From Diadema antillarum (lineage: Eukaryota): a stretch of DNA of 64,000 nt. Shown here piece by piece: positions 32,774-47,775 of the stretch; position 1 is the stretch's first letter, and the number at the start of each line of letters is the position of its first letter. The notes under the pieces were generated by a model. It was given only the letters and a program-made list of their open reading frames with translations, was not told the origin of the DNA and ran no database searches. A program made the position numbers and the translations under genes. The stretch spans positions 4,712,001 through 4,776,000 of the forward strand of contig NW_027271172.1 in NCBI RefSeq assembly GCF_040938485.1. Reading direction: 5' to 3'.

Positions 32774-33820
32774 TTACGCATCCTTCGCCTCGGTAAAAAC
32801 ACGTACATTCATGGACATTCAAGTATAGAACGCACGGCCTAGAGCATGCTCACGTCATCTTTTTGTGATACGGAAAAAGGAAGAATCTAAAGCAAAATCA
32901 CATATCTTAGCTTTTTTGTATCCTTAAGTGTACTTACGATGTCTGAATAATTGGCGTGTTGCTATCCTCGCTCGTTCTCGTGTTCTGACGAGTGCTGCCG
33001 AAATGCTCAATGGACATAAGATAGATTAAGACGGTCATAGCTTCATGGACTTTCCACTATTATGTTTGCACAGTGTGTGAGCGAATACGACCAGACGACC
33101 GTTGTTTACTTGTGCTCCCTGGTGATCTTCGAACTGAGTCAATACATACTTTATAACCATAGATTTCTCCGCACAGGGCGCTATATTTATGAGCGGCTTC
33201 GTGTGACCATGAAGTAGTTTTCAGTCAGTCCGCAGCGCGGGCTAAACAGTCCGCAGCGCGTGCGATAATGAGGCACGAACAAATAGGTTCTATAATCTCT
33301 GCGCGCGCTCGCATGTAGAAGCGGGGCGCATATTTTTTATTTACACGCAAGCCTGTGGCTTTTCGCAATCTAATTCAGTGAAACCGCTCGTGATGCGTCT
33401 ATGCTTACTCCACGAGGGTTGTTTGTTGCGAAGAGTTCTGTGAGTACTGTACCCTCCGTTCGCGAAGATTCGATTCGTACACGTTCATCAGTGAGTGTGT
33501 GTACGCGCTGTGAAAGTTTTGCTCGCCGTGGTAGACCTGCATCCAATTAGTACATGCATGTATGTAAACGAGTGAGAGTGCGAAAAAGAAAACAATACAA
33601 AACAAAAAAATCTGACCTGGAGGAAAGGGGGAGAGAGAGAATCATACGGAAGGAGATTAAAAAAAAAAAGCAATGAATATTCTGTGATATCTCATCAAAC
33701 CCGCACAAAAGTGATCAATATTATTGCGGGTACATTCCATGGAAGACCACTAGGCTGCCTATACTTTATTGGTGTATGATGGGGGTGTATAATGGGCTAC
33801 ACTGACCAAATATTATACAG

Positions 33821-34858
33821 ATAATGTGTTTAACAGCATTCAAGGTTACAGGATCTATACGTACGGTATTTATAGATCCTGTAACCTTGAATGCTGTTAA
33901 ACACATTATTATACACTCATTCCCGGTTAAGAACGCTACTTATGTGCTCTTTTTGTGTGTACCTATGTTCCGCTTATTCATACATACACTCCTTGATTTA
34001 ATTACTATTATGATTTCATTAACTGCCGTTATTGTTTATATGGCTGCCTGCTTTGACATACGCGAGGAGTTTCACATGTGTGTTTGTGCGCACGCATCCG
34101 TATCCACTGTGTGTGTGCAGATGTTTAGTCATTTATACGTACACTGTATTTGTAAATGCTTATATTTTGTATGCTTGTTTGTGATTGTATATCTGCAAGT
34201 TGTATTATGCAAGATTTATGCATATATACACTCCCACCTGTGTAATTATTCCCTGCCGTCACATTATTATACACTCATTCCCGGTTAAGAACGCTACTTA
34301 TGTGCTCTTTTTGTATGTACCTATGTTCCGCTTATTCATACATACACTCCTTGATCTAATTACTATTATGATTTCATTAATTGCCGTTATTGTTTATATG
34401 GTTGCCTGCTTTGACATACGCGAGGAGTTTCACATTTGTGTTTGTGCGCACACATCCGTATCCATTGTGTGTGTGCAGATGTTTAGTCATACGTATTTGT
34501 AAATGCTTATATTTTGTATGCTTGTTTGTGATTGTATATCTGCAAATTATATTATGCAAGATTGATACATTATACACTCCCACCTGTGTAATTATTCCCT
34601 GCCGTCTCTGCCTCTTTCACTGTAGTTATCAGTTCCGCTATTGTTTTGATCATCACTATTATTTTCTATTTGTGTTATGATATCCATGTTTTGTATTTTG
34701 TCCCCAGTCTTAACAAAGGGCAGGAAGCCCGAAAGCTTGAGTAAAATCACTTGTGAAGATTAAGCAACGTCTACCGCCTCCTTATTCTCGTTTACATACA
34801 CACTCCAAAAAGATGCGACGACCCAGGGGTTCATCATTAGCTGAAGACACACGACTCA

Positions 34859-34860
<2 letters not shown>
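33821..34860 (+). mobile_element. Probable PLE-derived remnant: 39-bp perfect hairpin, ~360-bp tandem dimer, degenerate hammerhead motif
   Basis: Inverted repeat 33821-33859/33871-33909; direct repeats starting about 33904 and 34262; hammerhead-like motif at 34707-34741. Confidence 0.45.
34707..34741 (+). ncRNA. Degenerate minimal hammerhead ribozyme motif (G5 mutated to A)
   Basis: GUC-UUAACAA-A-GGGC-AGGAA-GCCC-GAA-AGCU-U-GAG; same architecture as 17302-17339. Confidence 0.5.
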
Positions 34861-43628: not shown

Positions 43629-46600
43629 TTCTTTTTACTTCTGTTGTTTTAACAAAAATAGAAAGGGGGCACCAGAGGGGGCGCTCCCTCTCGATTCGCG
43701 ATTGCGTCATCCACAAATGTCAAAACTCATTGCTTGCATTTCAGGGGCGGATCCAAGAATTCCGTAAAGGGAAGACACCTTTCAAAATGAAAGGCTGGCG
43801 CAACCCCCTCCCCCTTATTTTTTTTTCGTTTTATTTCTTTTGTTTAAACGAATAAAAAGAAAGAGAAAGAAAATGGAGGAGGGGGTGCGGCAGTCTTTAC
43901 TTTTGTAAAGGCGCCTCCCCCTCCGCGTTATGACATTTGCAGTAAATTCGGAAATTTTGACTTTTCTGGTCGACGTGTTATGACATTGGTGGTTAATCCG
44001 TTTTTGACATAATTTTGTGGTTGACGAAATCGCGGATCGGGGGGGGGGGGGGGCGGCGCATCCCCCTCTGTTATTTATTTTTTTTTGTTTAAACAACAGA
44101 AATAAAAAGAAAAAACGGGGGGGGGGGGAGGGTTGGCAGCCTTTAATAATTTTGTAAAGGCGCCTCCCTTCTTTATACGGAATAATTCCTGGACCAATCC
44201 CTGTAGTGCAAGCAATGGGTTTTGCCATTAACTTGTGGTTGACGCAGTCGCGGATCTATAGAGTGGGGCGCGGCGCCCCTCCCCGTTTCTATTTTTCTTA
44301 AAACAGAAGAAATAAAATGAAAAAAAAGGGAGGGAGTTGCGCCAACCTTTGATTTTGTAAAGGCGCATCCCCTTAACAGAATTCCTGGATCATCCCCTGT
44401 GACGCCTTATGACATTTGCAGTAAATTTGGAAATTTTGACATTTCTGGTCGACGTGTTATGGCATTTGTGGTTAATTCGATTTTGACATTTGTGGTTGAC
44501 GCAATCGCGGATCGAGAGGGGGCGCATCCCTCTCTGCGTGCCCCCTCTCTGATATATTTTGTTAAAGCAACAGAAATAAAAAGAAGAAAATGGGGGGGGG
44601 GGGGGTCGCGCCAGCCTTTGATTTTGCAAAGGCGCCTCCCCTTTACGGAATTCCTGGATCCTCCCCTGTGACGAGTTATAACATTTGCAGTAAATTTTGA
44701 AATTTTGACATTAGTGGTCGACGTGTTATGACTTTGTGGTTAATTCGATTTTGGCATTTGTCGTCGACGTGTTAGGACATTTGTGGTCACTATGACATTT
44801 GTCGTCAACGTGTTATGACATTAGAGGTTGTTATGATATTGCATGATCCAAATTCAAATGAATTTATGAAGGATTTTCTGCATCGATCATGATATTACAA
44901 AAATGAAATACAGTCATTTCTTTTTGTTTACGAGACATATAGATAAACGTGTACAGATTAAAGAAAAGAGAACACGTCGATTGACCCACTCGGAATAAAG
45001 AAAATCGAATGATCTGACTGCATTATGGCACATGAATTGAGAGTGTAAATTCAGAAGACTGTCGTCAAATAAGCATATAGCTTGAAGATGCGACAGCCAC
45101 ATTAGTGGTTGTTATGACTCTACTGGTCGATTATTGTTGACATTAGTGGGCTCTACACAATACATGGTGACAGCATATTTTGAAAGAAAATCATACAATG
45201 ATATTGTGAATTCACCTAACTCCCTCAGCTTTTGAGCATCTGACTTGAAATTTGGCACATGTGACAGCTATTATAGTTTTGCAAACTTCATTTTTTCTTA
45301 ATGTCAAACATTGTGTTTTCATGATAACAATATTTTAATGAAAATCGTAGAAATTGCTGATTTATTTCCTTTACTCACTCAGGTTTTGAGCACTTGACTT
45401 GAGATATGGCACATTATTGTGAGTGAGCAAAATAACACATTACTGTACTGTTAATTTTATTCAATGTTAAACAATGCATTGTCATATGGTTTTTTTTTTC
45501 CAAGAAAAGCATACAAAGTAATCATTGCTAGTTGAGCTAACTGCCTCAGTGTTTAGTTTGGGGTATTAATCACATAGGTGATACTTCTAGTTCGTATTAC
45601 AGTACTTCTTGGATATTGGAGGATCAGATTACATCTGTACCTTCATGAAAAAAGTGCTTGAATATAAAGAAGTGAATAAAGTGCATAATAATGACTTCAT
45701 GCAATAGTGGTGTAATTTTCCTTCATTACATGTGACTGCTTATGTACATGTTTCTAGACAAACTGATCAATGTAGAGAGTAGAAAGTGGTCTTGTAAACA
45801 AACATTGTTAAGTTTAAGAATCAGAAAGAGAGAAGGGGGAGAGACAGAGACTCGAGTATGAGAAACAAATAAATTGTATATATGATAGGCTAATTTAAGC
45901 AGTGATCGAGGGAGGAATACACGAGTAATGCATTTGAAAAAAGAGGGGTCGAGAGAGGTCGGAAAAATGAATATGCAGATAGTGAGTCTTTGAAACTAGT
46001 ATGAAGAAAAGAGGGGCAGGTTTGAGAAACAAAATAATATACCATCAGTATGAAGATAGATTTAGGGCCTTTAATAGCAACAGATTTAACAGAGGGGGGT
46101 TGGGGTCTGAGAAATAAAATTAATACATGTCAATACAATGTATATAGAGGGGGTCTTAGAAACAGAAATCATGTGATATGAGAGGGAGTCAAGACAGATA
46201 GAGACAGCTTGTATTTGGAACAAAAATACGTATGATGTATGGAGAGACGGGAGAAGAGAGAGAGACGTTTAAGAAATAAGAGAGTGAGGGGGGTCTGAAA
46301 GACAAATACATTACTTTTGATACAATGTATTGATTTTAAAGTGAGAAAAATGGCAAAGATTTTCCAATGTATTTCATTCCATTCAGGTGTCATTAGATTT
46401 AAGCGATCATGTTATTTCACAACTCTCTGATACATCTACATGCACATGTACCAGCCTATTCCATAACTTTCAGATTTTTTGTTTTGTATTGTTTTGTTTT
46501 TCGCACTCTCACTCGTTTACATTATTGGACGCAGGTCTACCACCGCAAGCAAAACTTTCACAGCGCGTACAAACACTCGCTGATGCACGTGTACGAATCG

Positions 46601-47775
46601 AATCGTCGCGAGCGGAGGCACTGTACAAGTACAAGTAACCCACAGAACTCTTCGCAACCCGAGCGGAGTAAGCATAGACGCATCACGAGCGGTTTCATTG
46701 AATTAAATTGCGAAAAACCACAGGCTTGCGTGTAAATAAAAAATACGCATCCCGCGGTGTGCCGTGTTGTGCGTTGGCATCCAGTCAGTCGTCACGGCGT
46801 GCGAATCTCGAAAGAGCGCGGAGGACGTATGCACGCTCGGAGCGGTCATGAATACATAATTGCTGTGTGGTGTTCTTTTTAAACTATCGTTGTGCAGCCC
46901 CAGCATAACATTTACAGCTCATTTTTACATTAAATGAAAGAAGAAAGCTCAAGGTCTAATTTAATGACAATGATTTGATAATACTGGAAAGGGAATTAGG
47001 GTAAAAATACGAGTAATTTCACGCGTTGAAAATATAAAATTTAAACCCGAAAGAAGTGGGTCAAATACGTTCTTAACCACCTTGCATCTCTTTCAAACTA
47101 AATAAGTAGGATACTTGATTATATTATTTTCAAAATATGGAAAAATCAAGTCACTCTATCTTTTATACCTCATGGGATCCAGCAAACTACAACAGTATGT
47201 CACATCACTCTTTGTTCGAAATCGTCCATTAGCGCATTCGTACAATGCTGGATCGTGATTGGTCAGAACCGAAGGTCGCATCACATCATCACATCGTCTG
47301 CTACTGTGTTTTTTTTAACTTCCTGTGTCGGGTCTCGAAGACTGAAACTCGGCTTAAACGTGTATATAATAGGTTTATTCTGTTATATTCTGTCAAAATT
47401 TCGTAGATAATTATTTAAGGATTCGTTATCGCCACTTTGTGTTCGTATGGATTTGTCGTTTGTTTGACTACTTGCAGATACGAGCACGTCAGCAATTTCA
47501 CACGTTGTAAAAAAAAAAAAAAAAAACCACTTGGGTTTAGTCCCGTATACTCATATTTGTGTTACGATGTTTCTCATGCCTTTTCTTTTCTGAAATGTTC
47601 CATTGTGATTTTCTTTTCATGTTTAGTTTTACATCAAGTTGTCTTCAAAGTTACGGTTTAATAAACAAAATAACCTTGTGTCTGTTTTTTTCCTTGGACA
47701 TTCTCACTCCTTCAAATTATATTTCTGGTTTTGATGATATTGTAAGAGTGCTGGTTGTATGTGTCGGTAGCGTGG

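What the first reader, a model, noticed from the sequence alone, without database searches (positions are those of the whole stretch)
33321..46755. Hidden spacer-less palindrome with ~2.9-kb arms; all three large insertions fall in one arm
Seen: the right arm 43846-46755 (~2910 bp) is contiguous. The left arm survives as 33321-33615, 35295-36942, 40787-41590 and 43629-43845 (~2960 bp), separated by a 1.7-kb block, a 3.8-kb LINE and a 2-kb HINE. Orientation flips at gttt|aaac (43845/43846) with no spacer. Arms are roughly 85-90% identical by eye, with no obvious target duplication at the outer ends. Established: long perfect palindromes are unstable. Inference: an old foldback duplication or giant foldback element, possibly stabilised by asymmetric insertions.
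Basis: partly seen in the sequence, partly recalled or inferred. Interest (0 to 1): 0.7.

Follow-up and report, generated by a model that had tools for sequence, protein, structure and literature searches.

The report
Foldback transposon copy with three passengers
The hidden palindrome is real, but it is one copy of a gene-less "foldback" jumping-DNA family found at dozens of places in this genome, a kind known since the 1980s, later interrupted by three unrelated mobile elements.

Summary
Window 33328-46748 is a near-spacerless palindrome with its axis at 43845/43846. The right arm is contiguous and the left arm is split by foreign DNA.

It did not arise here by duplication. The same ~6.5-6.8-kb unit, with the same centre and the same left/right asymmetry, lies at other loci with unrelated flanks. 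The whole unit is bounded there by a perfect 9-bp, GC-rich target-site duplication (about NNCCSGGNN): 10 independent copies are 9/9 and 3 more are 8/9. The assembly, which contains haplotigs, holds 132 conserved termini.

A tree of arms puts all left arms in one clade and all right arms in another (100/100). The arms had therefore already diverged in the founder.

About 0.65 kb is ancestral arm sequence that the right arm lost, and 1.04 kb is a separate dispersed repeat. The LINE and the Helentron-like (HINE-like) element are genuine local insertions.

No coding capacity was found and no transposase could be linked to the family. The 9-bp duplication and foldback build point to the Mutator/foldback group, by inference only.

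This copy itself lacks a target duplication, which I could not explain.

The element is ordinary in kind. One oddity is that two colinear contigs carry one copy in opposite orientations.

The parts
33319..33327 (.). Left flanking 9-mer AAGCGGGGC. This is where a target-site duplication would be, but it does not match the right one.
33328..33615 (+). Left terminal domain. It starts GCATATTTTTTATTTACACGCAAGCC and pairs with 46470-46748.
33616..33820 (+). Block A: family sequence present next to nearly all other termini in the genome but missing from the right arm of this subfamily.
33821..34861 (.). Locus-specific insertion of an unrelated dispersed repeat. Other copies elsewhere match at about 94% identity. 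It includes an 89-bp palindrome at its start and a ~352-bp internal tandem duplication.
34862..34935 (.). (TA)n microsatellite. It is intrinsic to the family at this position and varies in length between copies.
34936..35294 (+). Block B: family sequence of the left arm that is absent from the right arm.
35295..36942 (+). Left arm core (non-repetitive domain). It pairs with 44873-46472.
36943..40783 (+). LINE insertion with endonuclease and reverse-transcriptase ORFs, broken into three frames, and an (AAATA)n tail. It is absent from all other copies.
40784..41595 (+). Left arm tandem-repeat domain: units of about 260 bp, with 23/47-bp subrepeats at 40837-41028.
41596..43628 (+). ~2.0-kb non-coding insertion with terminal hairpins, sitting between T runs. 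It is very high in copy number and absent from other copies of the foldback family.
43629..43845 (+). Innermost left repeat unit, running up to the symmetry axis at 43845/43846.
43846..44872 (-). Right arm tandem-repeat domain: about four degenerate ~260-bp units, with 23-bp subrepeats at 44706-44822.
44873..46469 (-). Right arm core.
46470..46748 (-). Right terminal domain, ending ...GTAAATAAAAAATACGC. The junction at 46470-46472 is the deletion scar where blocks A and B are missing.
46749..46757 (.). Right flanking 9-mer ATCCCGCGG, which does not match the left 9-mer. An unrelated, younger repeat family begins about 16-25 bp further on.

Best explanation
Window 33328-46748 is one old copy of a non-autonomous foldback transposon family, a cut-and-paste DNA element that is almost entirely two long inverted arms.

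From the outside in, each arm has:
- a ~290-bp terminal domain whose outermost ~31 bp is nearly invariant;
- a non-repetitive core of ~1.65 kb;
- ~1 kb of degenerate ~260-bp tandem repeats.

The two arms meet head to head with no unique loop.

A transposase supplied in trans is inferred to recognise the conserved termini. It is inferred to integrate the whole palindrome with a 9-bp staggered cut at GC-rich, roughly palindromic targets (NNCCSGGNN).

The founder of this subfamily already had unequal arms. Its right arm had lost ~0.65 kb plus the (TA)n tract, and the arms differed by a few percent.

After insertion here, three unrelated elements landed in the left arm: a 1.04-kb repeat, a LINE and a Helentron-like element.

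Shown here: the structure, the copy family, the target-site duplications, the arm phylogeny and the nested insertions. Inferred: the cut-and-paste mechanism, the Mutator-type affiliation and the trans-acting enzyme.
For: - Recurrent unit. C169, C1074, C79, C907 and C266 carry the whole palindrome with the same order of domains and the same left-only block. Their flanks are unrelated except for haplotig or duplicate pairs.
- Conserved centre. All 40 scored candidates of 2003 first-look candidates match the 301 bp spanning the axis. Many also match themselves on the other strand.
- Termini. There are 132 matches to the 21-nt terminus in the assembly, against 1 for the reversed control.
- Target-site duplication. 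It is perfect (9/9) around whole elements at C1074, C79/C907, C48/C76, C68, C200, C337, C351, C663, C710 and C1555. It is 8/9 at C138, C351 and C301.
- Arm tree. Left-type and right-type arms form two clades with 100/100 support and congruent inner topology across four lineages.
- Deletion in the right arm. All 25 other terminus loci examined, and both ends of the C301 copy, carry blocks A and B next to the terminal domain.
- No coding capacity seen. No ORF longer than 137 aa lies in the element proper, and none has a Pfam match.
- Literature. Foldback elements are known from Drosophila, sea urchin and plants. Most are assigned to Mutator, with duplication size used as the clue (PMC4079207).
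Against: - This particular copy has no target-site duplication: AAGCGGGGC versus ATCCCGCGG, 4/9.
- No transposase could be tied to the family. The 22 MULE-domain hits in the genome lie outside every mapped copy.
- Read-level support across the centre could not be obtained. Only short contigs were served.
- Copy counts are inflated by haplotigs and local segmental duplicates.
Confidence: 0.9

Rival explanations
1. In-situ foldback (inverted) duplication of ~3 kb of local sequence at this locus, later broken up by insertions.
For: The arms abut with no spacer. This copy shows no target-site duplication.
Against: The same palindrome, centre included, exists at many other loci and is bounded by 9-bp duplications. 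Each window arm is as close to, or closer to, the same-type arm of other copies than to its own partner, and arms cluster by type with 100/100 support.
Confidence: 0.02
2. Two independent insertions of a common ~3-kb dispersed repeat that happen to lie head to head.
For: The arm core is a common repeat, with 2580 first-look candidates.
Against: The head-to-head junction sequence itself is conserved across dozens of loci. Target-site duplications flank the pair, not each arm. The left and right arm trees are congruent.
Confidence: 0.03
3. This copy is a hybrid. It is a foldback element whose two ends come from two different insertions, joined by ectopic recombination or deletion between family copies. 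That would explain the missing target-site duplication.
For: The family rule of a 9-bp duplication holds in at least 13 copies but fails here and at C169. Foldback-type elements are known to mediate rearrangements by ectopic recombination (PMC4079207). Another copy of the family shows an orientation change between colinear contigs.
Against: No reciprocal end carrying the complementary 9-mers was found within 2 mismatches. Both haplotigs carry the same arrangement. Both window arms branch at the same basal position in their clades.
Confidence: 0.3
4. Assembly artefact: a collapsed or mis-joined repeat that creates a false palindrome.
For: Palindromes and repeats are prone to misassembly. I could not lay long reads.
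Against: Two separately assembled contigs, C284 and C96, agree at 99.4% over 15 kb including all junctions. The centre is conserved in many other copies.
Confidence: 0.02

Closest known systems
Drosophila FB (foldback) elements, grouped with Mutator-like (MULE/NOF) elements
   Same: The element is almost wholly made of long inverted arms. The arms contain tandem repeats. The target-site duplication is 9 bp. Most copies are gene-less. (The FB properties are from my own knowledge plus PMC4079207.)
   Different: Here the tandem repeats are long (~260 bp) and lie at the inner end of the arms. The outer ~2 kb is non-repetitive. There is no sequence relation and no linked transposase.
Tetris of Drosophila virilis (PMC4079207)
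   Same: The arms are modular, with a unique outer flanking domain and then ~220-bp tandem repeats. The duplications are 8-10 bp. There are no ORFs and no known autonomous partner. Assignment to Mutator rests on duplication size alone.
   Different: Tetris has a middle domain between the arms, whereas this family has essentially none. The arms here are longer (2.9-3.6 kb against up to 1.7 kb). The host phylum is different.
TU elements of the sea urchin Strongylocentrotus purpuratus (Liebermann et al. 1983, cited in PMC4079207; details from memory)
   Same: They are foldback transposons with long modular terminal inverted repeats, in an echinoderm genome.
   Different: As I recall, TU elements have short (10-15 bp) tandem repeats in the outer domain, a middle segment and 8-bp duplications. 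I could not obtain their sequences or the papers, so identity is untested.
Galileo/Kepler/Newton (P superfamily foldback-like elements of Drosophila buzzatii)
   Same: They have long inverted arms with internal tandem repeats and cause rearrangements by ectopic recombination (PMC4079207).
   Different: Galileo makes 7-bp duplications and has a P-type transposase. Here the duplication is 9 bp.

Membership tests
Foldback transposons (structural class) | Long terminal inverted repeats make up most or all of the element. | tested here: met
   The arms are 2.9 and about 3.6 kb of a ~6.5-kb element proper.
Foldback transposons (structural class) | The arms are modular and contain tandem repeats. | tested here: met
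   Each arm holds ~260-bp degenerate units and 23/47-bp subrepeats in its inner ~1 kb.
Foldback transposons (structural class) | The element is mobile as a unit: multiple copies at unrelated sites, each flanked by a target-site duplication. | tested here: met
   Ten copies have a perfect 9-bp duplication and three have 8/9. Flanks are unrelated. This is not met by the window copy itself.
Foldback transposons (structural class) | Typical copies have no transposase gene. | tested here: met
   No ORF in the element proper has a Pfam match, in the window or in the clean C907 copy. The interiors of longer copies were not read.
Mutator / MULE superfamily | Target-site duplication of 9-11 bp. | tested here: met
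   The duplication is 9 bp.
Mutator / MULE superfamily | An autonomous member encodes a MULE-type DDE transposase between matching termini. | tested here: inconclusive
   PF10551 hits 22 places in the genome. None lies inside a mapped copy or on a contig with a listed terminus. 32 termini went unlisted and the sequences could not be fetched.
Sea-urchin TU elements | Sequence identity or shared termini with TU1/TU2/TU4. | not testable with these tools
   No TU sequence or paper was reachable.
P superfamily (Galileo-like) | Target-site duplication of 7-8 bp. | tested here: not met
   The duplication is consistently 9 bp.
Transib / RAG-like | 5-bp duplication and CAC termini. | tested here: not met
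   An apparent 5-mer repeat (CCSGG) turned out to be the core of a 9-bp duplication. The termini start GCGTAT.

The most novel reading that the evidence does not exclude
Foldback copies of this family may be able to flip in place. Contigs C79 and C907 are colinear on both flanks, yet they carry the same insertion, with the same 9-bp duplication, in opposite orientations and without any footprint. Every left/right marker from nucleotide 32 inward is swapped. The swap would therefore have to arise within the outermost 31 bp or by cleavage at both termini followed by re-ligation. If this is real and not an assembly choice, it would be a clean natural case of transposase- or palindrome-mediated in-situ inversion. 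The missing duplication of the window copy might be a second trace of such activity.
Probability: 0.3. Interest if true: 0.5.

Novelty: new member of a known kind. Interest (0 to 1): 0.27.

Why it matters
- For annotation, this settles a 13.4-kb block as a nested stack of four mobile elements rather than a locus-specific palindrome.
- It defines a foldback family with clear termini, a 9-bp GC-rich palindromic target and an arm asymmetry inherited from the founder.
- It shows that imperfect 6.5-kb near-palindromes, with arms about 6% diverged and a 0.65-kb indel, persist uninterrupted at several loci. Nested insertions are therefore not needed to keep them.
- The family could serve as a marker for rearrangement breakpoints in this genome, but the kind of element is long known.

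Tried and rejected
- **5-bp duplication.** I first read the ends as a 5-bp duplication plus 2 variable terminal nucleotides. I rejected this once the 9-mers were compared in register.
- **Reciprocal ends.** I looked for reciprocal recombinant ends carrying the complements of the window's two 9-mers and found none within 2 mismatches.
- **Empty site.** I searched the two flanks for one. The left flank is unique. The right flank runs into another repeat family after about 25 bp.
- **Transposase.** I looked for a MULE transposase inside mapped copies and found none.
- **Reads.** All runs were short Logan contigs, so no record could bridge the centre or the junctions.
- **Rfam.** Nothing was found in the window.
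- **Binding-site repeats.** I searched for internal repeats of the terminal motif, as in Galileo and Tetris, and found none.
- **Literature.** The TU-element papers were not held.
- **Earlier findings.** A lookup by sequence came back blank.
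Full report
**Observation**

The inverted repeat exists as described. Against the window, the contiguous right arm pairs as follows:
- 44873-46472 with 36940-35295, at 87.8% over 1682 columns;
- 46470-46755 with 33615-33321, at 82.7%;
- 44198-44829 with 41535-40919, at 85.6%.

A last left unit lies at 43627-43862. With gaps set aside, the arm cores are about 94% identical.

The best symmetry axis is 43845/43846, inside a T-run/A-run. The surrounding 400 nt fold as one imperfect hairpin (z = -8.0).

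The inner ~1 kb of each arm is a degenerate tandem array. Direct repeats show offsets of about 260 and 480 bp, and there are 23/47-bp subrepeats at 40837-41028 and 44706-44822.

Contig C96 is a 99.4% haplotig of this locus and carries the identical architecture.

**It is a family, not a local event**

The genome (G000) is 1.75 Gb in 2963 contigs and contains haplotigs. It holds the arm core many times: 2580 first-look candidates, of which 40 were scored. The hits come as head-to-head pairs about 1.9 kb apart.

I fetched seven such regions. C169 (with its haplotig C2269), C1074, C79 and C907 each carry the complete unit of 6.5-6.8 kb, uninterrupted. The order of domains is the same as in the window once the foreign DNA is removed. 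They also have the same extra block in one arm only.

C266 (with C699, which is very similar to it) is a truncated copy in reverse orientation. Flanks differ between lineages.

The 301 bp spanning the axis match in every one of the 40 scored candidates, out of 2003 first-look candidates. At many places the same stretch also matches itself on the opposite strand. The spacerless centre is therefore inherited.

**Ends and target sites**

All ends finish ...GCGTGTAAATAAAAAATACGC. The assembly holds 132 such termini, against 1 for the reversed control.

Read in register, the 9 nt outside the two ends of one element are direct repeats:
- **9/9:** C1074, C79/C907, C48/C76, C68, C200, C337, C351 (270970-293474), C663, C710 and C1555.
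- **8/9:** C138, C351 (204192-226956) and C301.
- **7/9:** C141.

The 9-mers are GC-rich with a CCSGG-like core.

Bounded copies span 6.5 to about 22 kb. The longer ones presumably carry passengers, but I could not read them.

The window copy (AAGCGGGGC versus ATCCCGCGG) and C169 have no duplication. No reciprocal ends were found. The left flank is unique, and the right flank meets a younger repeat family after about 25 bp. I leave this unexplained. A recombinant origin is possible.

**Arm history**

I built a maximum-likelihood tree of twelve arm cores. It splits them into a left-type clade and a right-type clade, each with 100/100 support. The order of lineages is the same inside both clades: window, then C266, then C169/C1074 and C79/C907.

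In C266 the labels are swapped because that copy is reversed. The arms therefore diverged before these copies separated, and they have been inherited together.

**The "1.7-kb block"**

Positions 33616-33820 and about 34936-35294 are present in every copy of this subfamily. They are also present next to the terminal domain in all 25 other terminus loci examined, and at both ends of the C301 copy. The right arm of this subfamily therefore carries a deletion, with its scar at 46470-46472.

Between the two blocks, other copies have only a (TA)n tract. The window's 33821-34861 is a separate dispersed repeat, with full-length matches at about 94% identity on many contigs.

**The other passengers**

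Positions 36943-40783 encode endonuclease and reverse-transcriptase domains on the + strand in three broken frames. The element ends in (AAATA)n. The uninterrupted sequence in C169 and C907 shows its insertion point.

Positions 41596-43628 are absent from the other copies. The insertion sits between T runs, begins with a 12-bp-stem hairpin and ends with another hairpin. Its depth in public runs is about a hundred times that of the arms.

Three insertions in the same arm has a chance of about 0.26, given clean arm lengths of 3603 and 2903 bp (my arithmetic).

**Coding and enzyme**

No ORF in the element proper exceeds 137 aa, and none has a Pfam match, either in the window or in the clean C907 copy.

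MULE domains occur at 22 places in the genome. None is inside a mapped copy.

The Mutator-type assignment rests only on the 9-bp duplication and the foldback architecture. That is the same argument the literature uses for Tetris (PMC4079207).

**Comparison with known elements**

Foldback elements have been described in Drosophila, sea urchin, Chironomus and plants (PMC4079207).

It is probably a clean copy of this family, although that note gives an 8-bp duplication where I find 9 bp.

Earlier notes call the genome sea-urchin-type. I did not test that.

**Verdict**

This is a real and well-bounded member of a known kind of element, and an ordinary one.

The most interesting by-product is the orientation difference of one copy between contigs C79 and C907, whose flanks are colinear on both sides. 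It needs confirmation at read level.

Noticed in passing
L016/L024 (C79:1620916-1627609) versus L015/L023 (C907:505716-512567): The two contigs share both flanks. One flank is 98.7% identical over 3 kb. The other is 96% identical and lies beyond a 4.3-kb extra segment in C907. Both contigs have the same 9-bp duplication, TTCCGGGTC. The 6.7-kb foldback element is nevertheless in opposite orientation: all 161 left/right-diagnostic alignment columns from nt 32 inward are swapped, and there is no footprint. This is either an in-place flip or an assembly choice.
   Followed up: partly
window 46773-47400: About 25 bp to the right of the foldback end, a different repeat family begins. It has at least 40 copies at 90-95% identity and is younger than the foldback copy.
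   Followed up: partly
window 41596-43628: The Helentron-like insertion has a word depth in four public runs roughly 100 times that of the foldback arms. It therefore belongs to one of the most abundant repeats of this genome.
   Followed up: no
L013/L021 (C169:388699-395473), L017/L025 (C1074:160804-167331), C26:4060936: The C169 and C1074 copies are nearly identical (arm distances 0-0.01). Only C1074 has a target-site duplication. The right flank of C169 keeps 8/9 of that 9-mer plus a few further bases, and C26 shows the same end. Several family copies cluster on C169 and C1074. This suggests spread by local segmental duplication as well as by transposition.
   Followed up: partly
window 33821-33909 and 33902-34606: The 1.04-kb inserted repeat starts with an 89-bp perfect-ish palindrome. 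It contains a ~352-bp tandem duplication (93.6% identity) that is present in both haplotigs.
   Followed up: no
G000 C291:2035382-2035624 and C483:347053-347295; C552:1566913-1567191 and C955:436462-436740: MULE transposase domains lie in long open frames (1201 aa and 853-868 aa). They are possible live or domesticated Mutator-like genes and candidate mobilisers of the 9-bp-duplication foldback families.
   Followed up: no
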